Positions 282 to 59,588 of a stretch of 64,000 bases of DNA are shown here, one piece after another; position 1 is the first letter of the stretch, and each line of letters opens with the position of its first letter. Both the position numbers and the translations under genes were made by a program. Below the pieces are notes generated by a model. That model worked only from the letters and a program-made list of their open reading frames with translations. It did no database searches and had not been told where the DNA came from. Where the stretch lies: positions 1 to 64,000 of the IMG/VR virus record IMGVR_UViG_3300029984_000001; one strand, given 5' to 3'.

Positions 282-3200
282 TTAATTTCCTAATGCTAAG
301 TTTTCCATATCTTTCATTATTTCAGAAAGAGATATATCCTGATTGCTTTGAGTAGCCTTTTGAATTTTATTTAAAATGTTTTGTTTCTTCGATTGGATAT
401 CATTATTAGAACTAGTTTGTTTATTATCATTACCATTATCTGATAATAGTTTAACCATATCAGATATTGGTGTAGTATTTACACAAATATTAGTTAAAAT
501 AGTAATAACACTTTGTAAAAACTTCCCAATCTCAGGATTATCTTTAAGTGAAGATTGCGATTGGGTTTTAGTTATATTAGAATTATCTTCATTTTCTCCA
601 CCAATCCCATTATTATTTATTTCAAAAGTTCTTCTCATATAGGTATCTGGATTTACAGGAACTCCATTTTGTCTAGTTTCATAATGTAAATGTGGACCTG
701 TACTATTTCCTGTAGAACCAATATTTCCTATACCTTGACCTTCTTTTATACTATCTCCTGGTTTGAGATTGCTAGATTCATTCATGTGTCCAAAATAATG
801 TTCTCCACCAATAGCATCTTTCACAACTAATAAATTACCTAACCCGTTACTATCTTTAGTCGATTTATTTTGGACTACTGTTCCTGATATCGGAGATTTA
901 ATCGATGTGCCTTTAGCAGCTCCAATATCTATTCCAGTATGATTTTTAGGTATAGAACCAGTAGTATCTCTAAGACCAAATCCAGAAGTAACATTACCTT
1001 TTAGACTATTACTAAAGAAATTCTCTATAGCTCCTCCAACACCTTTGTAAACAGCTCCACCTACAGAAGATCCTGTTAATACTCTTCTAATATCATATAT
1101 ATCATTTCTACTTGATAAGTCTGATATTTTCACAACATCTCCTGTTTTGGGTGCATGAATATATTTATCATCTCCAATATAAATACCAACATGAGATGGT
1201 GGTGATGAACTCCCTTTGAATAATACTATATCTCCTGCTTGAATATCTTTTTGATCTACATGAAAACCAGCATTCTTTTGATCGTAAGTTGTTCTACCAA
1301 CATCTATTCCCATTTTATTAAATACATATTGAACAAATCCTGAACAATCAAAACCATTAGGAGTCGTTCCTCCCCATAAATATGGAGTGCCTAAGAAACT
1401 TTGAGCTATCTTTATAACTTCTCCTGGTTTACCTGAAACAGTTGTTCCTGAACTACTATTACCAATAGAAGAACTGTTTGCATCTTTATTAAATCCAAAT
1501 ATATTGTTCATAGAGTTACCGATAGCACCACTTAGATCACTAAAAAATCCTGCAATCCCATTAGAACTACTTGAACTACTATTAGTACTAGATGATATAC
1601 CTGTTGCAGCTGGATTATTTGGTGTAGTATCACCTGTAGCCTTTTTATATAATGAAGTTACTGTTGGAACCCAATCTTTATTTTGACCATTTGGATCATT
1701 GGCTGCTCCTATTGGTGCGTATTTTGAACCTATTTGATCAATAGTAGTTAAACCTTTCTTTATATAATTATCACCCAAATTCTTAATTGCAAAATCTAAT
1801 CCTTCATTTAATGAATCGAAATGTTTTATTGTTTTCCAATTATTATTCCAATCCATTATACCTGCTGGATTATTATCATTGTTTAAAGCAGGACTATTTC
1901 CACCAGTTTCATTTATCATGATAGATGCAGCTAATGATGGATCTACTCCATATTTTTTTCCTAAGTCTATATATGTTTGACCCATTCCTGATAACTTACC
2001 TCTTAATATAGCATTAACACCATCAGAAGTAGATTCTCCTCCAACACCATTAAATAACTTTTTAGATTCATTAGCACCACCTACATTTTGCCATGGTAAA
2101 TTTCCAGTATATTTAGCTGATACACTATTATTATTATTATTATTAGATGATTGTGAATCTGTTGCTATGACTTTATTTTTATTTATATTTTGATAATCAA
2201 TTACACCTGGAGATACAGTTTCAACCTTATTGAATGGATTTACATTTTGAGAAGTAGGTTGGTCTTGTTTATTAATATAATCTTGATATTTATCTATTTT
2301 TGTATCGGTCATAGAATTAACTATATATTTTCCTTTTCCTTTGTTTTTATTAATATAGTCTTCCATAGATATATCAACATTATTTTTCTTTTTATAATCT
2401 TCATATTCTTGTCTAGCTTTTTCACGTTGTTGTTGTAGATCAGTGTTATCTATTCCAAATATAGGTAATAATGTATCGAATATTAAATCTATCAAGAATG
2501 AATCAGGTAAAAATGATAGAATTATAGTCAATCCAGTTAAAGCTTTCATAAGACCACAACCAACTTTTTCTAAGAATGTTGGTTCTTCTGTGATACCCAA
2601 TATAGTTTGAGCATTAGAATAACCCATTACAAAGTCCACAATAGCAAGGGCTATATTTAATACTCCACCAGTAGATAAACCAGCTAATCTAGCAGATACC
2701 TTTGTTATATTCGCTGCTATTTTTTGAGTCAATCCGCTTAAGAATTTAGGAATAAATTTTTCTACAATCTTTACGGTTCTTTCTGTACCTACAAGAGCTT
2801 CGATTTCAGGATTACTAACTAAATTAAATAAGAATTTTTTTATACTTTCCATAGCTCCACTCAATGCTTTATCCATACCAATTCCTTTATATACAGAATT
2901 CATAATTCCACCAGATTTTGCTATGAAATTGGTACTTTTTTCTACTAATGAACCTGCCCCTCTTGTGATATTTCCTAATTTAGATGCAGTATTTGTCCCC
3001 ATTATAGTTTTTAAAGGATGAAGCATATTCTTTCCTAAATCAAAACCTTTACCAATAATTCTAGATGATTTATTAGCTAACCATCCAAATCCTTTTAATG
3101 CTTTGGTTCCTGTAGCTCCACCAGTTAATATATATCTACTAATAGCTTTAGTTCCATTACCAATCTCATTATATTTTTCCCCTGTTATAGAATCTGTATG

Positions 3201-9887: not shown

Positions 9888-12800
9888 ATGATATTTATAG
9901 ACGAAATAAAATCTCTTAAGTTGTATAATAAACCTTTTTATCTTCCTATTAATCTAAAAGATAAGAAGAGAGGAAGTTCTGTATTTCTTTTAGGTAGAAA
10001 TACCTATCCAGATGGTAGTGGTTATGCTGCTGCTGATATATTATCATCTAATCCATTACTTAATAAAAAATATTTCGAATCTTATTATATAGAAAAAGAT
10101 GTTACTTTCTATATAAATAATGAAGGTTATGTAATGGTTGATAAAATGTCGAAAGTGTTAAATGAAGATAGTTTAGATAAGTTATCAACTGTATTTGGTA
10201 CTGCATCATCATTAAGTATGAGACATTACAAGAATAATGGGACAGATGATGATCCTAATATCGACAAAGACGATAAAGGACAACCAAAATTAAAAGAAGG
10301 CGAAATAAATCCAGATGACACTAAAGACAACAAATTAAAAGCGGATGTATCTAAATCCGAGGACGCTGAACCAACAAATCCAAATAGTACAGATAGTAGT
10401 AATGATAATATAGATACAAATGAAGATGATAAATCTAAATTAAAACAAGATTCAAGAATAAATATATGGGATGAATTAGATAAGGTAGAAGAAAAAGGTG
10501 GAAATAAACATGAATTAATATTTGAATTAACATTCAAAGATTATGATAATAATTATGAATCTCCACGTTCTAGAAATAGTTTATCTAAATATTCTTCTAT
10601 TAAAATACATGATAGTTCCCAATTTAAACATGTTAGAATAGGTAAGAATTATAACGGAAAAGCTTTTTATGATGGAGATGCTTTAGTGGGATATGTAAAT
10701 GTAAATAAAGATAATAATACTATTCAGGCTATGGAAGTGTCTAAAGAGTATCAAGGAACTGGTTTAGGTTCTCAAATATTAAATTTTGCTATAAAAAACC
10801 TCAATGCGACGAATCTTACTGTAAATAAAAAGAATAAAGTTGCTATTAATATGTACAAAAAAAGTGGTTTTGAAAGTTATGATGAGACTGAATATATGTG
10901 GTTTATGAAATTAAATAATAGTAAAGTTGTAAAAGAACAAGTTATGAATGAGTTTTCTAGTTATGAAATGATAAGTGATTTTATGGGTATGATTAAACAA
11001 GCTAAAATAGATGCTTATAATAAAGAATGTCAAGAAAGAGCTTTACAAAATAGATTGATGTTAGAAAATGGAGTTATATCTGAAGGTAATTTTGAGCAAG
11101 AATTAGTTCCAGACGAATTTATAGGTAAAATAGAAGACTCTCTTACTGGTGGTTTCATAGAGTTTGTAAAAGAAGATTGTTCTGTTGTGTTGGGAATTAA
11201 GAGTGAGTTAGAATATATGAATGAAAATATAAATTCTAGTTATAAAAATAAAATTCATAATCTATTATATAATGATAGATTTAAAACTCCTAAAGAAGTT
11301 TTAAATCAGTATGATACTGTAAAAGAAAAAAATTCTGATATAAAATATACTTATTTAAATTATGATAAATATGTTGGAAAAAACTTGTTTATAGATTTAT
11401 CTTTTTATAATGACTCTTTCTATAAAAATAATTCACTTACAAATGACAAAGCTGTAGATTTCTATATTGATTTTATAAAAAGATTAATATTAGATAAAAG
11501 ATTAGATGGTATTTATAATAAGAGAACTATACTTATACCGTTAGACCATGTTATAGAAGATAAGAGAGATTTAATTTATACTCAAAGTATAAATATATTA
11601 TCTTGTATTATAAGAATGATTAATGATAAACATCCTGATGGTTTATGGGATTTTAAAGGTATAGAATTTTTATTATTATCCAATAATGGATATATGAAAT
11701 TTGAACCTGATAAATTGACTAAAGAAGATATTCCTAAATTTGAAAGTCTATTAATAAAATTTGTCAATAAAGAACCGATAGTTGATGATAGTAACATAAA
11801 AGATTCACCGCAAGCTATAGTCGCTAATATATCGGATAAAATTGAAACTTCACAAGGTATTAAGATACATAATCTTACAGGACAAAGTGGAGATAAGAAT
11901 ATAGATGATATAATTAATAAAGTATCAGATGTAGCATCTAAATCTATGTCAGAGGATGAAACTCTGGATAAATTAAATGATAATGATACAGATGATTTCA
12001 AGAATTTAGTTTTAAAAGCAGCTGTAACAAATGGTGAGGTAAAAATCAATGCAAGTAGACAAGCTAGATTAAATAAAGTACATGAAGAATTTATGAATGT
12101 AAAGATAAAGAATAAAACAGTAAAAGAATTATTATCTAAAGAAGATGAGAATAAGGAGTTACCCACTTTATCTTTAAATAATAAAATAGATACAGTAAAT
12201 GAGGAGTGGAATGATTTAAAATTTGTGAATTTCAATACTGTGTATGATATAAATAAAGATATAGTAGATATTCTAAATTCATTATCTACTAAGAAAAATC
12301 CTATTATGGTTAGGGATATACAAATAGAAGATACATCAACTTCTGAAGATATGGTGGAGACATGGACTGTTAAAATGGAAGATGCACATGGTCAAAGATT
12401 TAGTTTCGTATTTGAATTACCTAAATTTAAAGATAAAAGTTCATTATTTCTAAGAGGTAATAAGAAAAAGATCTCTGGACAATATGTATTAATCCCTATA
12501 TCTAAAACAGATGTTTATACAGCTCAAATTGTATCTAATTATAAAAAGATATTTATTAGAAGATTTGGATTGTCTGCTCCAGGAAAATCTTATCCAACTG
12601 CTGATTTGATTTATAAAACTTTATCTAAAAACGAATTTAAAGGATTAAAAATAACTCCAGGAGATAATACTAAAATATCTAATAAGTATGATCTTCCAAT
12701 GGATTATATAGATTTAGCTACTATATATTCTACAATAGAAACACCTAATACTATTATATATTTTAATCAAGATGAAATTAATAAAAAATATAAAGATAAA

Positions 12801-15116
12801 ATAGATAATAATAAAGGTTTACCATTTGCTGTAAATAAATCTAATAATAATATTATATATTGGAATGATAATGTTGTATTATCTGATATGATTTCTACTC
12901 AAATAAGTGTAGATATAAAAGATTATAAAGAATCTTTTGATTTACAAAAAACTAGTACTAAATACCATTATTCACAAGCAAGTATACTAGCATCAAAAAT
13001 TCCATTAATTGTTGTATTAGGTTACAATGAGGGTTTAACAAAAGTATTAGATAAATCAAAGATAGTATATAATATGCAAGAAAAAAGACCTTCTATAAAT
13101 AATACATTTGAAGATTACATAAAGTTTAAAGATGGATATATCGTCTATACCTTAACTTATGATTCTTCATTATTAATGAATGGGTTGAAAGAATGTAATA
13201 CAGAGGACTATTCTTTAACTGAAATAGATAATCCTACGATGTTTTTAGATTTCTTAGATATTTATGGAGGTAGAATATTAGCCGATGGTCTGGATAACTT
13301 TTATGAGTTAATGATAGATGGGATAACAGAAGATGTATTAGAAAGATATAATTTACCGACAGATTATGTTACACTTTGCTTACTAGCAAATAAATTGTTA
13401 GTGGATAATAAGTATATAGCTCATACTAATCCTGAAAGTAATCGTTATAGAAGTAATGAATTACTAGCTGGTTATGCGTATCAATGTATAGCTACGTCTT
13501 ATGGTGATTATAAGACATTTATTAAAAAGGGTAAGACTAAACCTATGACTATGAAGAGAACAGCTATTATAGATGCTATATTATTAGACTCAACTTGTGG
13601 GGATAAATCTGTATTAAATGAAATAATGGATTGGGAAGATGAATGTGCTTTATCTCATAAAGGTCTATCTGGTATGAACAATGATAGATCATATTCTTTA
13701 GATAAGAGAACTTATAATAAAAATATGATTAATCTTGTAGCTATGTCTACTGGATTTGCTGGTAATGTTGGAGTTAATCGTTCTTGTACAATAGATTCTA
13801 ATGTTCAAGGGAAAAGGGGATATCTTAAAATAGATCATAATGAGGATCAGTATTCTATTACCAAGACATTTTGTCCTACAGAAGCATTGACTCCTTATGG
13901 AACTACTTCTGATGATCCTTTTAGATCAGCTATGACATTTATACAAACAGGTTCTCATAGTATGAGAGTTAAAAAAGGTATGCCTAATTTAGTTACTAAT
14001 GGAGCAGACCAAGCGATGCCTTACTTTACATCAAACACATTCTCTTATAATTGTAAAGCTGATGGTGAGGTTGCAGAATTAACAGATTCATATATGGTGT
14101 TGAGATATAAAGATGGTACTCATGAATTTATAAGTTTAGAAGAAAAGGTAGAAAAGAACTCTAATGGTGGTATTTATATTACTATTAAATTAGACCCTTG
14201 TGTTAAACAAGGTCAAAAAATAAAAGCTAAAGATATAGTTGCTTATGATAAATTATCATACTCTAATAAAGTTGGGGATGGACGTAATCCTGCCTACTCT
14301 GGTTATGTAATATGTAAAATGGCTGTAATGAATACTGAGGAAGGTTATGAAGATAGTACAGTCATTTCTGATTGGTTATCAGATGCAATGGCTTCTGATG
14401 TTGTAATAAAGAAAGAAGTTATAATACCTAAAGATTCTAATATTCTTTCTATGGTAAAGAAAGGTCAACCTATTAAAGAAGGAGATTCTTTAATGGTATT
14501 CCAAAATGCATATGATCAAGAGGATGTAAATATATTATTAAAGAATTTATCCGATGATGAGGATGGTATTTCTGAATTAGGAAGAATTCCAATTAAATCT
14601 CATGTTGAAGGAATTGTACAAGATATAAAGATTTCTAGAACAGTAGAAATAGATCAATTATCTGAATCATTACAAAAAATAGTTAAAGCGTATGAAAAAC
14701 CAATTAGAGATAAAAAACAAATATTAAGTAAATATGATATTCCTAATAATGGTTTATTAGATGCCGATTATAAATTAGATAGTACTGGTAAATTGAAGAA
14801 TGTAGATGAAGGTTTATTAATAGAAATATTCTGTAAGTATGAAGATAAGCTATCTACAGGTGATAAGCAGGTGGCATACTCAGCATTAAAAGGAGTAGTT
14901 AAAGGAATGTATCCAAAAGGGATGGAACCTTTCAGTGAATTTAGACCTGATGAGAAAATACATACAATTACCGCTGTGGAAGGAATTTTAGCTCGTATGA
15001 TTGGCAGCCTTGAAAAAGTAGGTAGTATAAATAAAGGTTTAATAGAATTGGATAGATTGGTTAAAGACAAACTAGGAATTAAATGGAAATATCTAGAAGA
15101 GATGATGGAAAACTAA
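9888..15116 (+). CDS. rpoB: Split multisubunit RNA polymerase beta subunit (likely virion RNAP) with a long N-terminal extension containing a GNAT domain
   Basis: FELPKF..LRGNKKKISGQ; ALTPYGTTSDDPFRSAMTFIQ (cf. [20 protein letters not shown]); VMNTEEGYEDS (cf. GYNFEDS); GDK..LKGVV (cf. GDK..NKGVI). Ends before the bacterial beta C-terminal clamp segment, as in phiKZ/AR9-type split RNAPs. Confidence 0.92.
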   Translation: MIFIDEIKSLKLYNKPFYLPINLKDKKRGSSVFLLGRNTYPDGSGYAAADILSSNPLLNKKYFESYYIEKDVTFYINNEGYVMVDKMSKVLNEDSLDKLSTVFGTASSLSMRHYKNNGTDDDPNIDKDDKGQPKLKEGEINPDDTKDNKLKADVSKSEDAEPTNPNSTDSSNDNIDTNEDDKSKLKQDSRINIWDELDKVEEKGGNKHELIFELTFKDYDNNYESPRSRNSLSKYSSIKIHDSSQFKHVRIGKNYNGKAFYDGDALVGYVNVNKDNNTIQAMEVSKEYQGTGLGSQILNFAIKNLNATNLTVNKKNKVAINMYKKSGFESYDETEYMWFMKLNNSKVVKEQVMNEFSSYEMISDFMGMIKQAKIDAYNKECQERALQNRLMLENGVISEGNFEQELVPDEFIGKIEDSLTGGFIEFVKEDCSVVLGIKSELEYMNENINSSYKNKIHNLLYNDRFKTPKEVLNQYDTVKEKNSDIKYTYLNYDKYVGKNLFIDLSFYNDSFYKNNSLTNDKAVDFYIDFIKRLILDKRLDGIYNKRTILIPLDHVIEDKRDLIYTQSINILSCIIRMINDKHPDGLWDFKGIEFLLLSNNGYMKFEPDKLTKEDIPKFESLLIKFVNKEPIVDDSNIKDSPQAIVANISDKIETSQGIKIHNLTGQSGDKNIDDIINKVSDVASKSMSEDETLDKLNDNDTDDFKNLVLKAAVTNGEVKINASRQARLNKVHEEFMNVKIKNKTVKELLSKEDENKELPTLSLNNKIDTVNEEWNDLKFVNFNTVYDINKDIVDILNSLSTKKNPIMVRDIQIEDTSTSEDMVETWTVKMEDAHGQRFSFVFELPKFKDKSSLFLRGNKKKISGQYVLIPISKTDVYTAQIVSNYKKIFIRRFGLSAPGKSYPTADLIYKTLSKNEFKGLKITPGDNTKISNKYDLPMDYIDLATIYSTIETPNTIIYFNQDEINKKYKDKIDNNKGLPFAVNKSNNNIIYWNDNVVLSDMISTQISVDIKDYKESFDLQKTSTKYHYSQASILASKIPLIVVLGYNEGLTKVLDKSKIVYNMQEKRPSINNTFEDYIKFKDGYIVYTLTYDSSLLMNGLKECNTEDYSLTEIDNPTMFLDFLDIYGGRILADGLDNFYELMIDGITEDVLERYNLPTDYVTLCLLANKLLVDNKYIAHTNPESNRYRSNELLAGYAYQCIATSYGDYKTFIKKGKTKPMTMKRTAIIDAILLDSTCGDKSVLNEIMDWEDECALSHKGLSGMNNDRSYSLDKRTYNKNMINLVAMSTGFAGNVGVNRSCTIDSNVQGKRGYLKIDHNEDQYSITKTFCPTEALTPYGTTSDDPFRSAMTFIQTGSHSMRVKKGMPNLVTNGADQAMPYFTSNTFSYNCKADGEVAELTDSYMVLRYKDGTHEFISLEEKVEKNSNGGIYITIKLDPCVKQGQKIKAKDIVAYDKLSYSNKVGDGRNPAYSGYVICKMAVMNTEEGYEDSTVISDWLSDAMASDVVIKKEVIIPKDSNILSMVKKGQPIKEGDSLMVFQNAYDQEDVNILLKNLSDDEDGISELGRIPIKSHVEGIVQDIKISRTVEIDQLSESLQKIVKAYEKPIRDKKQILSKYDIPNNGLLDADYKLDSTGKLKNVDEGLLIEIFCKYEDKLSTGDKQVAYSALKGVVKGMYPKGMEPFSEFRPDEKIHTITAVEGILARMIGSLEKVGSINKGLIELDRLVKDKLGIKWKYLEEMMEN

Positions 15117-29348: not shown

Positions 29349-29379
29349 CAATATATAGAAGAAAAGGGAGATGTGTATT

Positions 29380-30012
29380 ATGAATATTATAAAAAGAGAT
29401 GGAAGAAAAGAAGTAGCAGTATCGCATAAAATAATAAATGCAATGATAATGTCTACTAATGGTCAAAAAGGATATGATCATTATAAATTAACATGTTTGG
29501 GAATGAGTTGTTTAGATGAAATAATAGAAAAGTATGGAAATGATTCTACAATAGAAGTAGACACAATTCATGATGAAGTAATAGATTTTTTAAAGAAAAA
29601 TCATTTATATGAATTAGCAATAAACTATTCTGAATATAGAGATGATAGATCTAAATGTAGGATGAAGAATAGTGAATTAATGAAAATGGTATCAGGTTTA
29701 TCAAAAGAAACTAATCGTGGAAATGCAAATGTGGGTAATAATTTTAGTTCGAAATTATTAATGATTGCATCTGGTGCAAATAAATGTAGTGTACTAGGAG
29801 AAATGCCAAAAGAAATAGCAAGACTTCATGAAGTAGGAGATCTATATTATCACGATTTAGATAGTTTTAACCTTACCACAAATTGTTTACATATACCAGC
29901 AGCTAAGACACTTAGTAAAGGCTTTAACACTGGTTATGGATACATTAAACCTCCCCAAAGGATAGAATCAGCATCAGATTTAATCTGTATACTAATACAA
30001 TCCGTACAGAAT
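29380..30012 (+). CDS. nrdD: Anaerobic ribonucleoside-triphosphate reductase, exon 1 (ATP cone)
   Basis: MNIIKRDGRKE ATP cone; GDLYYHDLD..NCLHIP; ends IQSVQN. Confidence 0.92.
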
Positions 30013-30508
30013 AATTGAATTGTTCCCTCATATGGTAACATATGTTGAATAACCCTGTGAACCTAGATATCTAGGGTGTGTATATAAGTCTAGAGATATA
30101 TGCTAACGGTAGAAGTGAAATAAGATTGATTGCACGACAATTGTAATCCTTTGAGAAATAAGCGAATAAGCTTCGTAAGAGAGCCTGAAGATCCTTTGAT
30201 AACTTCTAAGGATAGCTGGTAATAGCCGTGCTAAATTACATAATTAATATTATGTATAAATGTGAAACGAGTATCTGAAATCTATACACTAAGAGTTGTC
30301 TTAGTTGAAAATAAGGTATTAGAAATAATACACGAAGAAAGTAAGAGTAGGGATAAGTTTAGAGACTTATATGGTATATAATAATTGGTTTTATTATATG
30401 TCACCGAAGTGCAGGGTATCCTATAACAAATACTTATAGGATAATGATATAGTCTAGTCCGATAATTTTAAATTATGTTAAAGTATCACGAAAGTGACGG
30501 TATAATAG
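30013..30508 (+). mobile_element. Group I intron 1 in nrdD (496 nt, no ORF)
   Basis: Splicing joins QSVQN to DQYGGVSIPDLD in frame; exon ends in U with U-G at G30022 (P1 GAAU/GUUC); terminal G30508; ATGATATAGTCT S element; GAAA-capped P9. Confidence 0.9.
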
Positions 30509-31018
30509 GATCAATACGGTGGAGTAAGTATTCCTGATCTAGATAATACGTTAGGATTCTTTGTAAATCTAACAAAAGCAGAAATTCTAGAAGAAATGAA
30601 TGAAGATGAAACAGAAGTAACAAAAGACAAATTAGATAGAAAAGTAAGAAAGAAAACTAGACAAGCTATGCAAGGTATTTGTTATAATCTTAATACAATG
30701 CATTCAAGAGCTGGTTCACAAGTTCCTTTCTCTTCAGTTAATTTAGGATTACCTTTAGATGATGACGCTGCATTAGTGTGTGAGTTATTTTTAGAAGAAT
30801 TTGATAAAGGAATGGGAAAAGGAAGTCCTCTAATTTTTCCTAATGTTGTCTTTACTGTTAAAGATGGTGTAAATAGGAAAGAAGGAGACCCTTATTATTA
30901 TCTATATAAATTAGCATGTAAAGTTGCATCTAAGAAGATGAATCCAACTTTCTTAAATATAGATGCTGATTTTAATTTAGAATATTATAATAAAGGTATT
31001 GTTGCACAAACTATGGGT
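30509..31018 (+). CDS. nrdD: NrdD exon 2
   Basis: DQYGG..NLNTMHSRAGSQVPFSS..IFPN..AQTMG. Confidence 0.92.
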
Positions 31019-31464
31019 TAGGTTACGAGCAGCCCATATAAAACCTCATGAACCTAGAAATCTAGGGTGTATATACGAGTCTAGAAGTATATGCTAACGG
31101 TAGAAGTTGAATAAGATTGGTTATAGAAAAGTGATTATAACCCTACTAGAAATAGTAGTCCATAAACGAAGTAGCTTCGTAAGAGAGCCTAAGGTCCTTT
31201 TTTAATAAGGATAGCTAGGGAATACCGTGTCTGTTAATATAATTTTTATTATAAAAATGAGATGTAACGACTAGTTGAAATCTATATATCAGAGAGAAAT
31301 ACTTTGATTGAAAATAAGGTATAATTAACATTATACACGAAGAAAGTAGACGTAGCAAGAAACTCGGTGAAAGTCCGTAATGCGAAGTATGAGGCTTATT
31401 ATATATGGTAACAGTATATAATAATGAAGAGATAGTCTGTTTAATATTAAAATATTATTAAGCG
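31019..31464 (+). mobile_element. Group I intron 2 in nrdD (446 nt, no ORF)
   Basis: Splicing joins TMG to CRTQVLS; perfect P1 AUGGGU/GCCCAU (G31032); P7 AACGACUA/UAGUCU; terminal G31464. Confidence 0.93.
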
Positions 31465-32433
31465 TGTCGTACTCAAGTATTGTCGAATATAAACGGGTCT
31501 GCTGGACCTACAGGTAGGGGGAATATTGGAAATACAACGATGAATCTACCAAGATTAGGAATCTTATCTAATAATGATATAGATAAATTCTTTGAATTAT
31601 TAACAAATTTATTAGAAGAATGTAAGAATTCCTTACTATATAGAAAAGATGTATTATCAAATCTAAAAGTAAAAGATCTACCATTTATAGCAGGGCAAGA
31701 ATTATTCTTAGGATCTGAAGGATTAAAAGAAACAGATTCTATATTACCTATATTAGAACAAGGAACTTATGGTATGGGATTTGTAGGGTTAGCAGAAACT
31801 CTAGTAGCTTTATTAGGAGTGCATCATGGACAAACATTAGAAGCTAGAGAATTAGGTGAAAAAATAAATGGTTTTATAAGAGAGAAAGCAGATTATTATA
31901 CTACTAAATACTCCTTAAATTTCAGTGCATATGCTTCTCCAGCTGAGGAAGTATCTGGGAAACTTTGTAAAAGTGATATAAAGAAATTTGGTATTATAGA
32001 GGGTGTAAATGATAAAGAATTCTATACAAATGGATTTCATATACCTGTAGATTTCCCTATATCAATTATGAATAAAATACAAATAGAAGCACCTTATCAT
32101 AAAATGTGTAATGGTGGTCATATATCATATATAGAGGTAGATGATTATCCAACTCCAAAATTAGTTGAAAAGGTTGTAACAAAATCATTCACTGAAACTA
32201 ATATAGCTTATATAGGAATCAACTTTCATATAAGATATTGTAAAGAATGTGGAACTCTTTTACATGGAGAATCAAAATGTGATTGTGGGTCTACTAGTAT
32301 TCAAGGTATTTCTAGACTTACAGGATATTTAGGTCTTGATGAAAGATTTGGAGAGACAAAATCAAAAGAAAGATCTTTAAGAATTAATCATAATTCAGAT
32401 CATGCAAAAGTATATAATAATGTAAAGAAATAA
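31465..32433 (+). CDS. nrdD: NrdD exon 3 (spliced product about 703 aa)
   Basis: CRT thiyl Cys, GRGN, GFVGLAE, YTNGFH, GGHISY, CKEC..CDC zinc site, SRLTGYLG glycyl-radical loop. Confidence 0.93.
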   Translation, partial: CRTQVLSNINGSAGPTGRGNIGNTTMNLPRLGILSNNDIDKFFELLTNLLEECKNSLLYRKDVLSNLKVKDLPFIAGQELFLGSEGLKETDSILPILEQGTYGMGFVGLAETLVALLGVHHGQTLEARELGEKINGFIREKADYYTTKYSLNFSAYASPAEEVSGKLCKSDIKKFGIIEGVNDKEFYTNGFHIPVDFPISIMNKIQIEAPYHKMCNGGHISYIEVDDYPTPKLVEKVVTKSFTETNIAYIGINFHIRYCKECGTLLHGESKCDCGSTSIQGISRLTGYLGLDERFGETKSKERSLRINHNSDHAKVYNNVKK

Positions 32434-33222: not shown

Positions 33223-34518
33223 ATGAGGGAGAGATTTATTATGTGTAAACAAAAAGACTTAGTACAACAATCAATTGAGGATAAAACATATTCAAATTTT
33301 CATGAGGCTATTAGAAAAATATTTACAAAAGAATACTTCTATAAAGATTATGTTGATAATTTTACTGAACATGAAAAAACTTTTTTAATTAATCTTAAAG
33401 ATTTAAGAGTAAGACTTAGAGAATTCAATTATCCAGTACATAATATAAGTAGGCTTGGTGAATATAATGATTATAAAGATATTTTTGTAGTATATCATGA
33501 AGCTGATATAGATGGTCATAGTGTAAAAATAATCAACGGTCTATTAAATAATGGTGATATGTCTAATACTTTTGGTTGTGATGTAAGAGCTGATGAAGCT
33601 TTTGATATTATAAAAGAAAAATTAGATGAAGGTATGTTTGTAATAGTTGCAGATTTAAACTTTACAGAAGAATATGCTGAAAGAGTAGAAAATGAATTAG
33701 ATACTTCAAGATTTATATTATTAGATCATCATGGACATGCTATGTATTTAAATCAATATGATTGGGCTTTTGTGTTATCTCATGATGAAGAAAGTTTATA
33801 TTTATCTTCTGGTACTTTATTGTATTCTATGTTTTGTGTTGCTAACTTTAATTGCAATTTAATATTAGATACAATAATAGATTTAGCAATGAATACTGCT
33901 TTGTATGATACTTGGTTCTGGTCTTCTAATTTTGATTATACTAGAGAATTATCTGAAAAGTATTTTGGTAATAGACCAGAAGATATATGTATGTTATTTA
34001 AATCTATGAGTAAAGATAAATATGCTCAACATGTTTTAAATAATATTAATAATTTTCATGATATATTTGATAATGATGATAAATTAAAAATAAAATTTAT
34101 GAGAGATATGACTAGAAAAACTATTTATAGATATTACCATAATATGAGAATAGTAAACATTGATGATAAAAAGATTGGAATAGTATTTGGAGATAATGAA
34201 GTTTCTGCTGTTGGTAATTTTATTTTAAGAGCTAATAGAGAATTATCTTATTTTGCTATGGTAAATTTAAATAGTAATCAAATATATCTTAGATGTAGAA
34301 ATGATTATGATGTAAAAGAAATTGCTATTAGGAATGGTGGAGGAGGTCATACTCAAGCTGCTGGATTCCCTATGATTGATATATTATTTAATGATAAATT
34401 CTTAATAGATTTATTATCAAAAACACATCAAGTAGAAGAAGATTGTTTAGCATCTATTAAAATGATAAAAGATTGTGCAGAATTTGATGAAGATACTAAA
34501 GTATATAGATTAAGATAA
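33223..34518 (+). CDS. DHH/DHHA1 phosphoesterase (nanoRNase/NrnB-like)
   Basis: YHEADIDG, ADLNF, LDHH, GGGHTQAAG. Confidence 0.88.
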   Translation: MRERFIMCKQKDLVQQSIEDKTYSNFHEAIRKIFTKEYFYKDYVDNFTEHEKTFLINLKDLRVRLREFNYPVHNISRLGEYNDYKDIFVVYHEADIDGHSVKIINGLLNNGDMSNTFGCDVRADEAFDIIKEKLDEGMFVIVADLNFTEEYAERVENELDTSRFILLDHHGHAMYLNQYDWAFVLSHDEESLYLSSGTLLYSMFCVANFNCNLILDTIIDLAMNTALYDTWFWSSNFDYTRELSEKYFGNRPEDICMLFKSMSKDKYAQHVLNNINNFHDIFDNDDKLKIKFMRDMTRKTIYRYYHNMRIVNIDDKKIGIVFGDNEVSAVGNFILRANRELSYFAMVNLNSNQIYLRCRNDYDVKEIAIRNGGGGHTQAAGFPMIDILFNDKFLIDLLSKTHQVEEDCLASIKMIKDCAEFDEDTKVYRLR

Positions 34519-34593
34519 TTAGTTATTTATTCTAGGAGGATTTCTATCTTCCTAGATTTTATATGAATAAATTTTTAAGAAGAGGTGTATTAA

Positions 34594-35692
34594 ATGAAAA
34601 AATTATTAAAAAATATTAACAAACAAGAAATTAAAAAGAAAGCTATTATGGGTGCAAAAGCAATGATTGTTAGAACAGTAGTAAGAGCTGTTACTAATAA
34701 ACAAAATAGAAAGAGATTATATGAACTATGTATTAGATAATACAGCCGAAGGTCTATATATAAATCAATATAATCATAGAGAAGATTATAATAATATCAT
34801 TGTATGGTTATATAGTTTAAATAATAAAAATCTAAATAATAATATAAATACAACTGTAACTTCATATGGAAATAATAGTACTATTAAAGATGGTACTTAT
34901 AAAATAATACATAATAAATGTTTGATAATAGTAGAGGCAGGTCATCTTGGTCTTGATCAAGAGACTTCTATATATAAAGAAATTAAAATAAATATATTAG
35001 GTTCTAATAATAAAACCATTATAAAAGATGCTTATAAAACTATTAAAATAGATAGTGAATCTTGTATCCAATTAGAAAGAAGAAATGGACAACCTGTATC
35101 CATTGCTAAAAGAAAATTAGATACTATATTTAGTGATCAATTTGATGAAATAAATAATCTAATAATAAAATGGAAGGATCAACAAGATGTATTTAGAGAA
35201 CATGGTATGGCATTTAAAACAGGTATATTGTTACATGGGGTTCCAGGAACAGGAAAGACTTCTATAGTTAGAGCTATAGCTACAGAATTTAATATGAATA
35301 TAATGTATGTTAATGTAGCTACAATAAAAGCTCAAGATATAGACTATATCAATATTAGAAATAACAGTATTTTACTATTAGAAGAAATAGATTTAATGAA
35401 AGATGACGAAGATTATAAAAAGAAAGTAAGTTCTTTATTATCTTTATTAGATGGAATTACAAGTCCTAATAATTGTATCATAATAGCAACAAGTAATTAC
35501 ATAGATGCAATTGATGAAAGACTAGTGAGAAAAGGTAGATTTGATAATATAATAGAGGTTACTAATATTTGTAGACATACCGCTATTAGAATGTGTGAAA
35601 GTTTCAATATAGATCCTGTACTTGTATTAGAAGAGGGTAAAAAATCTTTTAATCCTAGTGAATTACAAGATAAAATATTAAAAATAATATAA
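34594..35692 (+). pseudogene. BCS1-like AAA+ ATPase copy 1; probable +1 frameshift near 34721 (ORF 34721-35692 retains the whole AAA domain)
   Basis: GILLHGVPGTGKTS, LLEEID, LLDG, ATSN..D..L.RKGRFD; strong AAGAGGTG RBS lies before ATG 34594 (48-codon ORF), weak before 34721. Confidence 0.7.
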
Positions 35693-35710
35693 TCATAATG
35701 GGGTGTTAAA

Positions 35711-37064
35711 ATGAATAAAACTGTAATAAAAGAATTTTTAATTAAAGAAGCGAAGAAAGAAATCAAAAAACAATTAGTGAATACTATATTTAGTAATAAT
35801 AATAAAAAGAAAGTAAAAGATTTAATATTCTCGAAAATATCATCATCTTATAAAGTATCTACAGTTAAAAATACTATATCATTAGAATATAAATTCTTAA
35901 TACACTGGATTAGAGATATAAAAAATAAAGAACTTTATAAAAATTTAAAACAATTCGAAAATAATGATGTCATGTTATTAGAAAATGGGGAATATAAAAT
36001 ATTATATGAAAATAATTTAATATTAATAAAATCATATACAGATGATATGTACATATAATATAATAATAGATGTTATTGGTAAAACAGGTAAAGAAATTGT
36101 TGAAGACATCATAGAATACATAGTTTCTAGTATTAAGAATGTTAGAAACACTAAAAAAGATCCAGACAGTATATACATAGATTATAAAAGATTTCCTACA
36201 GACGATTATTATATTTCAATATTAGGAAGAAAATTAGAAACTATATATTCTGAACAAATTGATGATATAATAAATATTATATGCAATTGGTCTAATGATA
36301 GTGATATATATCATAAACATGGACTAGCATTTAAAACTGGTATTATATTACATGGTGTTCCAGGAACAGGAAAAACCTCGATAGTTAAAGCCTTATCAAC
36401 ATATTTCGCCATGAATATGATTACATTAAATATAGCTTCTATATCTGCTAAAGATTTAATAAAATTTTCTCAACAAATAAGAACAGATGAAAATAAGATA
36501 GTATTATTAGAAGAAATAGATTTAAGAGATTCTGATGAAAAAGATAAAAAAATGCAAGAACTACTAACTCTATTAGATGGGGTTGATGGAGTAAATAATA
36601 TAATATTTATAGCTACTACTAATGATATTGATGGGGTTGATGTACGATTAAAAAGACCAGGAAGGTTTGATAATATAATCGAGATTACAAATATAAATAT
36701 AGATTTAGCTACTAAAATGTGTGAAAGTTTTAAAGTTGATTCTAATATAGTATTAGAAAATTATAATATTAAATTTCCTAATTCAGAAAAATACAATCCA
36801 GCTACATTGCAAGCAGAAATATTAAATGAATATCATAAACAAAAATCAAATATAAATAATATTGTAAATATAGACAATATTAACCTTAAAAATAAATCTA
36901 ATAATAAAACTTCATGTAAAGCTGAATATACACCATCATCTTATATAGGGGAGGTAAATTCGTTTAATATAAATAAGGGAGTAGATAATAAGTGGAATTC
37001 AAACGGACACCGTATTTATGGTTCTGAACCAATATATGATGAAAAGATAATAGCAACTAATTAA
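35711..37064 (+). pseudogene. BCS1-like AAA+ ATPase copy 2, split by a frameshift at about 36050-36060
   Basis: ORF 35711-36058 aligns with the N-domains of copies 1 and 3 (W..GEYKILYENNLILI); ORF 36042-37064 has no RBS but carries GVPGTGKTS/LEEID/RPGRFD. Confidence 0.8.
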
Positions 37065-37091
37065 TTTTAATTTATAGGAGTGTGTATTAAA

Positions 37092-38252
37092 ATGAATAAT
37101 AAAATATTAAATGTTTTGGTAAAAGAATCTAAACAAATGGCTATCCGTATAATAAGAGATAAAACATCAAAATTAATATCAGATAATAAATACAGAAATT
37201 GTGTGAAAAATGATATACTTTCTAAATTTAGTAGAAATTTAAAATTGATGGGTCATGAAGACAAATTTAAAATTAAATATGTTAGGATTATAAGATGGTT
37301 AATAAAAACTTTTAATATAGAGGATGTGTATATGCTGGATAGATTCAAATCCATTCCATACAAATGTTACACTTTCAAATATAATGGCTCTGTGTTGTAT
37401 ATAGATCATAGCAAAGAAGGGGATAATATATTATTAGATATAAAAATAATAACTATCAAAAAAGAAATAGGTGATAATATATATAAAGAATTAGTAGATA
37501 TATCAGCAGGGTCTCTAGAATGTATTTCGGATTCATCAAATAATTTTATAGCTATGTATAAATGTGATGGTGAAGATATATGTGATAGAATGTTGGTACC
37601 AAAAAGATCATTGGATACTATATTCTCTAATGAATTACCATTAATAATTTCCGATTTAGAAAACTTTATGAGTAAAAAATCTATATTCAAAAAACATCAA
37701 CTTCCATTTAAAACTGGTATATTTTTATATGGGGAACCAGGAACAGGTAAGTCTTCTATCGTAAAAGCCATTGCATCTAATTTTAATATGGATATATTTT
37801 ATATCAATTTAACTGAATTGAATTATGGTCAATTAAAGAATACTGTTAATGATATTAACGGTAGAACTCGCAGAATAAGAACTTCAATAATATTATTAGA
37901 AGAAATTGATCTATCAGAAAATGAAGATAACTCATTCAATGAAAAGAATAAAAAATTAAGTTTATTATTGAATTGGTTAGACGGACAAGAATCACCATCA
38001 GATATAATATTTATAGCTACTACCAATTATATAGATAAAGTTGATGAAAGAATAAAAAGATCTGGTAGATTTGATTATAAATATGAAATAAGTCAATTAG
38101 ACGAAGATCAAGCTTCTAAGATGTGTATGAGTTTTGACATAAATCCTAAAGAGATATTAGAATTAGATGAGTTTAAAGATTGTGTTACATATAGTCCCGC
38201 AAAAGTTCAAGAATATATTTTAAAGAAAATAGTGGTGGGTATAAATGAGTAG
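37092..38252 (+). CDS. BCS1-like AAA+ ATPase copy 3 (intact, 386 aa)
   Basis: GIFLYGEPGTGKSS, LLEEID, WLDG, ATTNY.DKVDERIKRSGRFD; AGGAG RBS. Confidence 0.9.
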   Translation: MNNKILNVLVKESKQMAIRIIRDKTSKLISDNKYRNCVKNDILSKFSRNLKLMGHEDKFKIKYVRIIRWLIKTFNIEDVYMLDRFKSIPYKCYTFKYNGSVLYIDHSKEGDNILLDIKIITIKKEIGDNIYKELVDISAGSLECISDSSNNFIAMYKCDGEDICDRMLVPKRSLDTIFSNELPLIISDLENFMSKKSIFKKHQLPFKTGIFLYGEPGTGKSSIVKAIASNFNMDIFYINLTELNYGQLKNTVNDINGRTRRIRTSIILLEEIDLSENEDNSFNEKNKKLSLLLNWLDGQESPSDIIFIATTNYIDKVDERIKRSGRFDYKYEISQLDEDQASKMCMSFDINPKEILELDEFKDCVTYSPAKVQEYILKKIVVGINE

Positions 38253-38565
38253 ATTTGAATCACAAGGAATACATACTAGATTATATTACATAATAGAAAG
38301 AAGTGGAGATGTAGATTATAAACTTAGAATAGAATATCTTATGAAAGAATATAATCTAACTCAAGAACAATCGGAGTTTGTTTCTCCAATAAAATATAAC
38401 TTTGAGAAACTTATCAAATCAAATTCAATAGAAGAAATAATGAATCTTTTAGAAAATGAAATAATAGATGAACTCAAAGCAAAAGAAGCATCTCGTATTA
38501 GGGTGCATAATCTTATGTATAATTTAAGAACTATGAATAGAAATAGTAGATTAGGGATGTTTTAA
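38245..38565 (+). CDS. Hypothetical protein
   Basis: Overlaps the AAA3 stop. Confidence 0.6.
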   Translation: MSRFESQGIHTRLYYIIERSGDVDYKLRIEYLMKEYNLTQEQSEFVSPIKYNFEKLIKSNSIEEIMNLLENEIIDELKAKEASRIRVHNLMYNLRTMNRNSRLGMF

Positions 38566-38623
38566 TTAGAGAGGGACTTAGTTCCCTCTTTTTATTTTAT
38601 ATTTTTAATAAGGGGAGATTAAA

Positions 38624-38887
38624 ATGAATATATTAAAATATAAAAGATTATTAAATCTTAGGAAAAGTGAAGAAACAATGTTATTTTACATGATATTAAC
38701 ACGTGGAGATAAAAGTGTAAGAGAAATAATAAAAATATCTGGAATTAATTATAAAAGAGCATGGTATATATTAGAAAAATGGATTGGTAGAGGGATATAT
38801 AATTGTGGTGTATCCTTGGATATGGGATGGTTAGAATTAGAAAAATTGCCTGCTGATTTTAATATAATAAAGGAGAAAATGATATGA
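38624..38887 (+). CDS. Small putative winged-helix DNA-binding protein
   Basis: SVREIIKISGINYKRAWYILEKWIGRGIY pattern. Confidence 0.45.
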   Translation: MNILKYKRLLNLRKSEETMLFYMILTRGDKSVREIIKISGINYKRAWYILEKWIGRGIYNCGVSLDMGWLELEKLPADFNIIKEKMI

Positions 38888-58364: not shown

Positions 58365-59588
58365 TTGAGATATCCTAAAATGATTGATAAAGAAGAAGAT
58401 GTAAAATATATATTAAATCTTAAACCTTCTGATGTTACTAAATCAACAGTAATAAAAATGTTTGGAGAGTTTAATGGTAAAGCAAGATTTAATCCTTATG
58501 ATGAAATAATGATTCCTAAGGATGCTTATGGTGAATCTCCTTGGAAGAATAAAAAACCTTTCTTAACAACTGTTGGATTATGGATGTTTAATATCCATTT
58601 TATATCAGAGAAATTTACACATGTATTCGATGGTTATATAAATAAAACTATAAATGGTAAAGAGTTTGGTAAAATGAATTCCAGATTATCTTATGCTTTA
58701 ATGGAAGATGATATTACTACAGATGACATGGATTATTTTTTTATGAGATGTGAAAAGTTCATGCCATTTGTTTCTATAATTTCTCCAACCATGAGTGAAA
58801 AAATGTTAACCTGTGGTACAGTAGCAGCTAAGAAATTAAATGAATTATATAAGAAGAAATATAAAGAGAGAATAGATGCTAAAGATCCTTTTGCTGCTGA
58901 TCAAATGGAACAAGAAGTATTAGATTACATGAGAGTGTATTTAGATGGTGATGAGTCTATGGATTTATTTGATTCTGGTGCAAGAGGAAGCTTTGGTAAT
59001 AACTTTAAAAACATGTTTGTTAGTAAAGGTGCTACAAGAGACCCAGACACTGGTGAATATAATATAATTATGAGTAATTATATGAATGGTATATCTAAAA
59101 AAGACTATGCTCCTATGTCTAATTCATTGGCTAGTGGACCTTATGGTAGAAGCCGTTTAACGGCACTTGGAGGTTACAAAGAGAAGCAAATATCGTCCGC
59201 GTATCAACATGTCGTACTCATGGACGGAGGATCTGATTGTTTAACTAAAAGATATATTGAGGTTTTCTTAACGGATAAAAATGTAGAAGAATATATGTAT
59301 AATTATATAATTGATGGTCCAGATTTAATTGAAATGACAAGTAAAAATATGAAAAAATATATAAATAAAGTTGTTAAAATGAGATTCTCTAATATGTGTG
59401 AATCGAAAAATGGATATTGTAATAAATGTGCTGGAAACATGTTCTTTAGATTAGGATTTAAGAATATAGGTCTAGCCTTATCTATTATAGCAGCAACTCA
59501 AAAACAAAAAACGATGAAGGGTTTCCACGATTCTACAATTAAATTTACTGAGATGAATCCACTTAAAGCTTTTACAGGACATTTTTAA
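58365..59588 (+). CDS. rpoC: Split RNA polymerase beta-prime subunit, C-terminal part (bridge helix and trigger loop)
   Basis: SGARGS, SNYMNGI, TALGGY..SAYQ..SDC, MC..GYCNKCAG zinc site, NIG..QKTMKGFH (cf. QLTMRTFH); TTG start with AAGGAGG RBS. Confidence 0.9.
   Translation: MRYPKMIDKEEDVKYILNLKPSDVTKSTVIKMFGEFNGKARFNPYDEIMIPKDAYGESPWKNKKPFLTTVGLWMFNIHFISEKFTHVFDGYINKTINGKEFGKMNSRLSYALMEDDITTDDMDYFFMRCEKFMPFVSIISPTMSEKMLTCGTVAAKKLNELYKKKYKERIDAKDPFAADQMEQEVLDYMRVYLDGDESMDLFDSGARGSFGNNFKNMFVSKGATRDPDTGEYNIIMSNYMNGISKKDYAPMSNSLASGPYGRSRLTALGGYKEKQISSAYQHVVLMDGGSDCLTKRYIEVFLTDKNVEEYMYNYIIDGPDLIEMTSKNMKKYINKVVKMRFSNMCESKNGYCNKCAGNMFFRLGFKNIGLALSIIAATQKQKTMKGFHDSTIKFTEMNPLKAFTGHF

What the first reader, a model, noticed from the sequence alone, without database searches (positions are those of the whole stretch)
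34594..38252. Tandem triplet of BCS1-like AAA+ ATPases, each with a divergent N-terminal domain
Three adjacent paralogs share RKLDTIFS/RKLETIYS/RSLDTIFS, F/H..HG/Q..FKTG..L.G.PGTGK.S, LLEEID, LLDG/WLDG, AT.N and R.GRFD, the clade signature of mitochondrial Bcs1-type unfoldases. The N-domains are homologous but diverged. This may be a hetero-hexamer or a set of substrate-specific unfoldases or translocases, and I know of no characterised phage system like it.
Basis: partly seen in the sequence, partly recalled or inferred. Interest (0 to 1): 0.7.

Follow-up and report, generated by a model that had tools for sequence, protein, structure and literature searches.

The report
Three tandem Bcs1-like phage ATPases
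An uncultivated 264-kb peat phage carries a conserved four-gene operon with three diverged copies of a Bcs1/YjoB-type AAA ATPase (a ring-shaped protein chaperone or translocase); related phages usually have one copy, and two of the three copies here are interrupted by natural one-base insertions.

Summary
Window 34594-38252 holds three adjacent paralogous classical-clade AAA genes (g1, g2, g3). Only g3 (37092-38252, 386 aa) is one continuous frame. g1 and g2 each have a one-base insertion in the N-terminal part, while their orthologues in related phages are intact (366/371 aa and 453 aa).

The breaks are not assembly errors. Independent assemblies reproduce them, and one run also holds the unbroken g2 allele.

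Bcs1 likeness is supported by sequence profile and by fold. The g3 model (pLDDT 90.7) matches only Bcs1 and B. subtilis YjoB over its full length, and its N-terminal part alone also retrieves Bcs1 first. The N-terminal helix is not hydrophobic, so these copies look soluble, like YjoB, rather than membrane-anchored.

The triplication is specific to this phage lineage and older than the split from two relatives. It sits between terminators with a conserved, overlapping 106-aa gene. Of 80 other viral loci, 79 have a single copy.

Bcs1-like genes in jumbo phages were already noted by Iyer et al. 2021, and no phage member has a tested function in what I searched. I read this as a new variant of a known kind: probably chambered chaperones with different clients. 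A hetero-oligomer is not excluded.

The parts
34531..34556 (+). Terminator-like hairpin with T-run, between the upstream DHH phosphoesterase gene and g1. It marks the 5' border of the transcription unit.
   Evidence: 8 terminator-like sites against 0.5 expected. The equivalent hairpin sits before g1 in relative L019 at 9934-9961.
34594..34740 (+). g1 N-terminal piece, a 48-aa ORF with a strong Shine-Dalgarno (AGAGGTG). It encodes the N-terminal helix found in intact orthologues.
   Evidence: It matches residues 3-38 of P0122 and 2-38 of P0123.
34723..34726 (+). g1 frame break: a four-base word GAAC where relative L019 has the codon AAG. This is a one-base insertion not in a homopolymer.
   Evidence: Leaving out any one of these letters gives a 365-aa open frame reading ...NRKRLY-x-YVLDNT..., like the orthologues. 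No indel was reported at this site in any of the 8 peat runs; contigs without gaps span it in at least six.
34721..35692 (+). g1 main ORF, 323 aa: second helix, Bcs1-type beta domain and AAA module. Its ATG overlaps the end of the 48-aa ORF by 20 nt and has only a weak purine-rich stretch upstream.
   Evidence: It is 62% identical to P0122 (366 aa) and 45% to P0123 (371 aa).
35711..36058 (+). g2 N-terminal piece, a 115-aa ORF with a strong Shine-Dalgarno. It holds the N helix and the first strands of the beta domain.
   Evidence: It is 40% identical to residues 1-107 of the intact 453-aa orthologue in L006/L019.
36048..36048 (+). g2 frame break: an extra T, which is polymorphic in the natural population.
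   Evidence: In run X5 a contig lacks this letter at depth 4.8 of 9.6. Without it the frame is open for 450 aa and reads ...SYTDDSTYNIIID..., like relative P0007, which reads ...SYTDDSTLNINID....
36042..37064 (+). g2 main ORF, 340 aa: last strand of the beta domain, AAA module, and an Asn-rich C-terminal tail of about 90 aa peculiar to g2 orthologues. There is no Shine-Dalgarno before its ATG.
37092..38252 (+). g3, an intact 386-aa Bcs1/YjoB-like AAA ATPase: N helix 2-46, beta-rich domain 47-170, AAA module about 180-386.
   Evidence: Shine-Dalgarno AGGAGTG lies before ATG 37092.
38245..38565 (+). orf106, a small gene overlapping the end of g3 by 8 nt. It is conserved in the same position in relatives, and its function is unknown.
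   Evidence: 35% identical to the 110-aa gene of L019, which has the same overlap. No Pfam, PHROG or Atlas match.
38568..38591 (+). Terminator-like hairpin with T-run, the 3' border of the transcription unit.
   Evidence: The equivalent in L019 is at 14015-14035.

Best explanation
Shown: the locus is a four-gene unit bounded by terminators (g1, g2, g3, orf106). g1-g3 are paralogues of one phage branch of the Bcs1/YjoB group of classical-clade AAA ATPases. Each has an N-terminal helix, a Bcs1-type beta-rich domain and a single AAA module with all catalytic motifs. The triplication arose once, before this phage diverged from at least two related peat phages, and all three copies have been kept since. 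In this phage population g1 and g2 each carry a natural one-base insertion; g2's is still polymorphic.

Inferred: like Bcs1 (heptamer) and YjoB (hexamer), each protein forms a ring whose N-domains enclose a chamber. ATP-driven movements would then hold, remodel or pass on folded or nearly folded client proteins rather than thread them. The N-domains that would line the chamber are the most diverged part (19-26% identity), so the three copies most likely serve different phage or host clients (subfunctionalised chaperones). They lack a hydrophobic N-helix and so probably work in the cytoplasm, like YjoB, not in a membrane. g3 is the fully intact copy. g1 probably still yields a protein lacking only the first helix, by re-initiation at the overlapping ATG. 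Broken g2 is probably impaired.
For: Identity: PF00004 in all three. Best single-domain PDB sequence matches are Bcs1 (84 bits, residues 123-356) and YjoB. Family profile A1 aligns positions 49-370 to yeast Bcs1 86-429 (191 bits) and 44-372 to mouse Bcs1. The g3 model has pLDDT 90.7. Foldseek top 20 are all Bcs1 or YjoB at E 1e-24 to 1e-16, and the next hit is at 1e-12. VIA-align gives Z 20-24 for Bcs1/YjoB over model residues 1/46-385, while other AAA proteins mostly cover only about 160-386. A model of the N-terminal 172 residues alone retrieves Bcs1 as its top six hits, E 9e-5 to 5e-3. All top 30 Swiss-Prot matches are BCS1 or plant BCS1-like.

Short loop where pore loop 1 would be, with no aromatic-hydrophobic-Gly motif in g1 or g2.

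Solubility: the highest 19-residue Kyte-Doolittle mean in the N-helix is 0.3-1.1 in this clade, against 1.6 or more in several relatives.

Lineage-specific, old triplication: the three orthogroups are each starred and together form one clade at 98 SH-aLRT. The triplet is intact in L019/L020.

Operon: terminators and the g3/orf106 overlap are conserved.

Rarity: 79 of 80 related viral loci and 5 of 5 other large, mostly (near-)complete phage records hold one copy.

Chamber-chaperone precedent: YjoB (PMC9565160). Phage Bcs1 orthologues: PMC7824862.
Against: No function has been tested for any phage member. Oligomeric state and clients are inferred only from distant homologues (about 20% identity to Bcs1). 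The N-domain is not recognisable as Pfam BCS1_N, and its profile alone finds no solved structure by sequence. Two of the three copies are broken in this population, which would also fit the extra copies being dispensable. Hydropathy alone cannot rule out peripheral membrane binding by an amphipathic helix. Nothing links orf106 to the ATPases beyond its position.
Confidence: 0.55

Rival explanations
1. The three paralogues assemble into one hetero-oligomeric Bcs1-type ring, comparable to the six different Rpt subunits of the proteasome. orf106 would be a cofactor or client.
For: All three genes are co-transcribed between terminators and retained together in three phage lineages. All keep arginine fingers and Walker motifs, so all could form active sites across subunits. 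Single-copy relatives must be homomers, so a triplication kept in strict tandem suggests joint use.
Against: The g2 break splits its beta domain and coexists with the intact allele in the population. g1 has lost its first helix in every run looked at. An obligate mixed ring should not tolerate this easily.
Confidence: 0.2
2. In this phage the array is decaying. Only g3 is functional, and g1 and g2 are young pseudogenes.
For: One-base insertions break both genes while their orthologues are intact. The internal ATGs lack the strong Shine-Dalgarno seen before every real start nearby. The g2 break lies inside a beta hairpin of the N-domain.
Against: The downstream frames are still open for 323 and 340 codons in a 25% G+C genome. 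The end branches of win_g1 (0.39) and win_g2 (0.18) are not clearly longer than those of their intact sisters (0.29 and 0.26), so no decay is visible yet. Both internal ATGs sit 14-20 nt before the upstream stop, a layout that allows termination-reinitiation. The broken g1 allele is the only one seen in eight runs.
Confidence: 0.2
3. The two +1 frame changes are programmed, either as ribosomal +1 frameshifts or as regulated production of forms with and without the N-terminal piece.
For: Both breaks go in the same direction (+1). Both lie in the N-terminal part, and both are followed within about 20 nt by a stop in the old frame.
Against: The two sites share no motif, and neither has a slippery or hungry-codon context. 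Orthologues in three relatives are unbroken. The g2 site is an ordinary indel polymorphism.
Confidence: 0.04
4. They are membrane-anchored translocases that pass folded proteins to a membrane-proximal assembling head, as Iyer et al. proposed for phage BCS1 orthologues.
For: PMC7824862 proposes this for phage BCS1 orthologues. Some relatives do have a hydrophobic N-helix.
Against: The N-helices of g1-g3 and their orthologues are charged or amphipathic, with a Kyte-Doolittle maximum of 0.3-1.1. The operon lies among nucleotide-metabolism and small early-type genes, not next to recognisable head genes.
Confidence: 0.08

Closest known systems
Mitochondrial Bcs1 (yeast P32839, mouse Q9CZP5; PDB 6sh3, 6uks, 8t14, 9gs2)
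   Same: The domain order is the same: N helix, Bcs1-specific beta-rich domain, single classical-clade AAA module. It is the best full-length sequence-profile and fold match. Walker B starts with Glu, the loop at the pore-loop-1 position is short, and the arginine fingers are conserved.
   Different: Identity is about 20%. There is no hydrophobic membrane helix and no Pfam BCS1_N hit. Walker B reads EE rather than ED. The host is a phage, with no Rieske protein or bc1 context. There are three diverged copies in tandem. The oligomeric state is unknown.
Bacillus subtilis YjoB (PDB 7w42/7w46; PMC9565160)
   Same: It is a soluble bacterial Bcs1-like AAA ATPase with a Bcs1-type N-domain fold. It forms a chambered hexamer that keeps specific folded clients from aggregating. 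Fold match Z 20.6 over model residues 46-386; AAA sequence match E 4e-21.
   Different: The YjoB N-domain has no sequence similarity to these proteins. YjoB is a single-copy gene of Bacilli under sigma-W control, not a phage gene. Here an N-terminal 45-residue helix is present, as in Bcs1.
Phage 'BCS1' orthologues of jumbo phages (Iyer et al. 2021, PMC7824862) and phrog_7485
   Same: They belong to the same family. phrog_7485 matches all three at E 1e-31 to 1e-37, including part of the N-domain. 62 GenBank phage records encode relatives, several annotated as BCS1 or chaperone.
   Different: Those phages carry one copy, and several have a hydrophobic N-helix. The window clade has three diverged copies plus a coupled small gene. 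Its N-domain profile finds only 14 clusters among 1.84 billion representatives.
Plant BCS1-like AAA-ATPases (Arabidopsis At3g28510-At3g28610 and others)
   Same: They are Bcs1-type proteins multiplied in one genome, in part as neighbouring genes. This is my reading of their consecutive locus numbers and was not tested here. They are full-length fold matches at E about 1e-21.
   Different: They are eukaryotic, mostly membrane-anchored and stress-induced, and they arose by an independent expansion.
IetA, the ATPase of the Ietis anti-phage system
   Same: It is a classical-clade AAA protein with weak matches extending upstream of the AAA core (PADLOC E 1e-11 to 1e-15).
   Different: The NCBIfam IteA model scores 32-44 bits against a cut-off of 510. 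No IetS protease partner is nearby, and the genes lie in a phage.

Membership tests
Classical-clade AAA ATPases (Pfam PF00004) | Walker A GxxGxGK[ST], Walker B, sensor-1 Asn, and a second region of homology with two arginines | tested here: met
   PF00004 at 78-89 bits against a cut-off of 21.2 for all three. K220, E270/E271, D273, N312, R323 and R326 of g3 are conserved in g1 and g2.
Bcs1 family (Bcs1/YjoB type) | A Bcs1-specific beta-rich domain directly N-terminal to a single AAA module (fold level) | tested here: met
   Full-length fold matches go only to Bcs1 and YjoB. A model of the N-terminal 172 residues alone has Bcs1 as its top six hits at modest scores: E 9e-5 to 5e-3, TM 0.40-0.49.
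Bcs1 family (Bcs1/YjoB type) | Sequence membership of the N-domain in Pfam BCS1_N (PF08740) | tested here: not met
   There is no PF08740 hit for g1-g3, and it is not among the families that members of A1 match, even at E up to 1. The N-domain profile A4 finds no PDB chain. Only a distant relative, P0050, carries PF08740 in the precomputed list. The full-length profile does align through Bcs1's N-domain.
Bcs1 family (Bcs1/YjoB type) | Walker B with Glu-Asp (ED) instead of the classical Asp-Glu (PMC9565160) | tested here: inconclusive
   g1-g3 and their orthologues read LLEEID. The first acidic residue is Glu as in Bcs1, and the second is Glu as in classical AAA proteins. Many phage relatives read LLEDID.
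Mitochondrial Bcs1 proper | An N-terminal transmembrane helix anchoring the ring in a membrane | tested here: not met
   The maximum 19-residue Kyte-Doolittle mean is 0.35 for g3, 0.48 for g2 and 0.98 for g1, against 1.6 or more in relatives such as P0124, P0150 and P0012. This rests on hydropathy only.
Mitochondrial Bcs1 proper | A homo-heptameric ring that translocates the folded Rieske protein | not testable with these tools
   A ring of six or seven chains of 386 residues exceeds the complex tool's 1000-residue limit. No Rieske or bc1 context exists in a phage.
YjoB (Bacillales chaperone) | Sequence-level orthology including the YjoB N-domain, and a cytoplasmic hexamer | tested here: not met
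   The PDB sequence match to 7w42 covers only the AAA part (query residues 190-340). The fold is similar (Z 20.6). The hexamer was not testable.
IetA/IteA anti-phage ATPase | A score above the curated NCBIfam cut-off (NF042959, 510 bits) | tested here: not met
   Scores are 32-44 bits. PADLOC IetA gives E 1e-11 to 1e-15 over part of the protein only.
phrog_7485 (phage proteins of unknown function) | A significant match over most of the profile | tested here: met
   E 1.7e-36 (g1, profile 48-378 of 430), 1.1e-30 (g2) and 1.9e-37 (g3). PHROGs has no curated cut-off.

The most novel reading that the evidence does not exclude
The three paralogues, perhaps with orf106, build the first heteromeric Bcs1-type ring: a soluble phage machine whose differently shaped N-domains form an asymmetric chamber for moving or remodelling folded proteins during infection. 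The split g1 and g2 forms would be tolerated or regulatory variants of it.
Probability: 0.15. Interest if true: 0.65.

Novelty: new variant of a known kind. Interest (0 to 1): 0.4.

Why it matters
Bcs1 is the only well-studied AAA machine described as moving a folded protein across a barrier, and YjoB shows that a soluble bacterial cousin works as a chambered chaperone. Phage members of this group are widespread in large phages, yet none has a known role. A lineage that has kept three copies with strongly diverged chamber-forming domains is a natural experiment in client specificity, or in hetero-oligomer evolution. It would be a good entry point for finding what phage Bcs1-like proteins act on. 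The coexisting broken and intact g2 alleles also show selection on copy number at work in a wild phage population.

Tried and rejected
- Megablast of the locus against GenBank phages found no match, so there is no close cultured relative.
- No RNA run could be listed for g3, so expression and trans-frame products could not be examined.
- The complex prediction of g3 with orf106 returned 'no answer' (score 0.01). It is evidence neither for nor against binding.
- The Atlas search for orf106 gave no usable hit, and its stored model is poor (pLDDT 0.50).
- The N-domain profile against PDB sequences found nothing.
- Rfam at gathering threshold and ARAGORN over the whole window found nothing.
- A defence-system reading (IetA, TRIP13) was considered and rejected on scores and context.
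- Sequencing or assembly error as the cause of the frame breaks was rejected. IMG/VR contigs from two other metagenome data sets are 100% identical across the parts they cover. Logan contigs from separate peat runs carry the same breaks. The broken ORFs were called on 11 and 17 contigs.
- An alternative genetic code was not considered, because the breaks are frame changes and not in-frame stops.
- The Bcs1 structure paper (PMC8482623) is not held. Statements on Bcs1's heptamer and membrane helix are therefore taken from PMC9565160 and PMC7824862.
Full report
**What is in the sequence**

The window is the first 64 kb of a 263,571-bp IMG/VR virus record of about 25% G+C. Many peat metagenome runs hold it. 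Between 34594 and 38252 there are three adjacent + strand genes with a Pfam AAA domain (PF00004, E 8e-22 to 6e-25). They are the only copies in the record.

All three keep Walker A, Walker B (LLEEID), sensor-1 and the RxGRFD arginine fingers. Their AAA parts are 45-53% identical and their N-terminal parts 19-26%.

**The frame breaks**

Only g3 (37092-38252, 386 aa, with Shine-Dalgarno AGGAGTG) is one continuous frame.
- g1 is a 48-aa ORF (34594-34740) followed in the +1 frame by a 323-aa ORF (34721-35692).
- g2 is a 115-aa ORF (35711-36058) followed in the +1 frame by a 340-aa ORF (36042-37064).

Related phages have unbroken genes. The g1 orthologues are 366 aa (P0122, 62% identical; L016-L018) and 371 aa (P0123; L019-L021). 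The g2 orthologue is 453 aa (L006, L019, L020).

At g1 the window has the four letters GAAC (34723-34726) where L019 has the codon AAG. At g2 there is an extra T at 36048.

The breaks are not assembly errors.
- IMG/VR contigs from two other metagenome data sets are 100% identical over the parts they cover; the longer one spans the whole operon.
- Logan contigs from eight separately sequenced peat samples show no indel at the g1 site.
- Gene callers found the broken ORFs on 11 and 17 contigs.
- In run X5 a second allele without letter 36048 stands at about half the depth (4.8 of 9.6). That allele gives an open 450-aa frame reading ...SYTDDSTYNIIID..., like relative P0007.

The breaks are therefore ordinary one-base insertions in a wild population. 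g2's is still segregating, and no other g1 allele was seen in the runs examined.

I think programmed frameshifting is unlikely, because the two sites share no motif, neither has a slippery context, and the orthologues are intact.

Both downstream ORFs begin with an ATG 14-20 nt before the upstream stop, which would allow re-initiation. However, they lack the strong Shine-Dalgarno found before every real start nearby. On the tree, the end branches of the window's g1 and g2 are not clearly longer than those of their intact sisters, so there is no sign of decay yet.

**What the proteins are**

By sequence they are classical-clade AAA proteins. The best single-domain PDB matches are Bcs1 (84 bits, query residues 123-356) and B. 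subtilis YjoB. Two-domain proteins such as VAT and Cdc48 rank higher only because they score twice.

A profile of 18 family members aligns positions 49-370 to yeast Bcs1 86-429 in one stretch (191 bits) and 44-372 to mouse Bcs1. That alignment runs through the Bcs1-specific N-domain.

An AlphaFold2 model of g3 built on 148 sequences has mean pLDDT 90.7. It shows a long N-terminal helix (2-46), a beta-rich domain (47-170) and the AAA module.
- Foldseek against the PDB gives Bcs1 and YjoB as the top 20 (E 1e-24 to 1e-16), with the next hit at 1e-12.
- VIA-align gives Z 20-24 for Bcs1 and YjoB over residues 1/46-385. Other AAA proteins mostly cover only about 160-386.
- All top 30 Swiss-Prot models are BCS1 or plant BCS1-like ATPases.
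- A separate model of residues 1-172 alone (pLDDT 79.8) has Bcs1 as its top six PDB hits, at modest scores (E 9e-5 to 5e-3).

At the sequence level the N-domain is highly lineage-specific.
- There is no Pfam BCS1_N hit.
- Its profile alone finds no PDB sequence.
- It finds only 14 clusters among 1.84 billion representatives, mostly this clade itself.

Two Bcs1-family traits described in the YjoB paper (PMC9565160) can be compared.
- Walker B begins with Glu. It reads EE here and ED in many phage relatives.
- The loop where pore loop 1 lies in threading AAA proteins is short and, in g1 and g2, has no aromatic-hydrophobic-Gly motif.

The N-terminal helix is charged or amphipathic in this clade (Kyte-Doolittle maximum 0.3-1.1). 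Several relatives have a membrane-like helix at 1.6 or more. By hydropathy alone, then, these copies look soluble, like YjoB, rather than membrane-anchored like Bcs1.

**Anatomy of the unit and its history**

Terminator-like hairpins lie at 34531-34556, just before g1, and at 38568-38591, just after a 106-aa gene (38245-38565) that overlaps the end of g3 by 8 nt. There are none in between (8 sites found against 0.5 expected). Relative L019 has the same layout, with hairpins at 9934-9961 and 14015-14035 and the same overlap with a 110-aa homologue (35% identical). So the unit is g1-g2-g3-orf106. orf106 matches nothing known.

Upstream lie a split nrdD gene and a DHH/DHHA1 phosphoesterase. Downstream are small unknown genes. 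Elsewhere the window encodes multisubunit RNA polymerase pieces, an endolysin and a virion protein.

On a maximum-likelihood tree of 52 relatives, the g1, g2 and g3 orthogroups are each strongly supported and together form one clade (SH-aLRT 98). The triplication therefore happened once, before the window phage split from the L019 and L016-L018 lineages, and all three copies were then kept.

The triplet is unusual. Of 80 other IMG/VR loci encoding relatives, each with 8 kb of flank where the contig allowed, 79 have a single copy. Five other large, mostly (near-)complete phage records have exactly one copy each. The exception, L067, is a 527-kb contig with four tandem copies of about 750 aa and a different architecture.

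**How it most likely works**

The following steps are inferred, not shown. By analogy with Bcs1, each protein would form a ring of six or seven. Bcs1 is a heptamer with an internal chamber that passes a folded protein through, as summarised in PMC9565160 and PMC7824862. YjoB is a soluble hexamer whose chamber is needed to keep specific clients from aggregating (PMC9565160). In each ring the N-domains would enclose a chamber, and ATP hydrolysis would drive holding, remodelling or release of folded clients rather than threading.

The chamber-forming N-domains are the most diverged part, and g2 alone has an Asn-rich tail. I therefore think the three copies most likely serve different clients.

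The main rival is a single mixed ring. Co-transcription and joint retention fit it, but the tolerated breaks in g1 and g2 argue against an obligate one. A second rival is that g1 and g2 are young pseudogenes here and only g3 works. The membrane-proximal head-assembly role proposed for phage BCS1 orthologues (PMC7824862) fits these copies poorly, because they lack a hydrophobic helix.

**Comparison and novelty**

The proteins work like Bcs1 or YjoB, and they are members of the broader Bcs1-type group by fold and by full-length profile. They are not members of mitochondrial Bcs1 proper, since they have no membrane helix and no BCS1_N sequence match. They are not YjoB and not IetA (scores far below cut-off). 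They fall into phrog_7485, a phage family of unknown function. GenBank phages encode relatives that are variously annotated as BCS1, chaperone or AAA ATPase.

The presence of Bcs1 orthologues in jumbo phages is published (PMC7824862). In the literature I searched, no phage member has a tested function.

What is new here:
- a conserved, lineage-specific triplication with diverged N-domains;
- the apparent loss of the membrane helix;
- the coupled small gene;
- the naturally segregating frame breaks.

I rate it a new variant of a known kind, of moderate interest.

Noticed in passing
window 29371-32433: The anaerobic ribonucleotide reductase gene nrdD is split into three ORFs (29371-30018, 30596-31021, 31480-32433). 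Weak, sub-threshold group I intron matches lie in both gaps: 30382-30478 at E 0.003 and 31347-31458 at E 0.16. Relative L019 has a split nrdD too, with an extra 229-aa ORF in a gap. Two introns are likely, as in other phage nrdD genes.
   Followed up: partly
L067:4277-13298 (IMG/VR contig of 526,783 bases): Four tandem paralogues of 732-771 aa, each with a C-terminal AAA module related to the window's genes and a long unmatched N-terminal part. This is an independent tandem expansion in a very large viral contig.
   Followed up: partly
window 9888-15116 (+): A 1742-aa ORF combines an RNA polymerase beta-subunit-like region (residues 640-1727, E 5e-132) with an N-terminal stretch matching acetyltransferase families (residues 240-337, E about 1e-9). 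A second RNA polymerase piece lies at 58365-59588.
   Followed up: no
window 282-9014 (-): A 2910-aa ORF lies on the minus strand. GC skew changes sign near 10 kb, where the coding strand switches. The ORF was not examined.
   Followed up: no
window 33223-34518 (+): A DHH/DHHA1-type phosphoesterase (phrog_4771, E 3e-16) sits directly upstream of the AAA operon. It holds the same position in L016-L021.
   Followed up: no
window 36800-37064 (+) and L019:12280-12503: g2 and its orthologues (L019 g2, P0007) carry an Asn-rich, poorly conserved C-terminal tail of about 70-100 residues that g1 and g3 lack.
   Followed up: no
window 38624-38887 (+): An 87-aa ORF just after the operon's terminator has a weak winged-helix (TrmB-like) match, E 0.005 and below the Pfam cut-off. 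It may be a small DNA-binding regulator.
   Followed up: no
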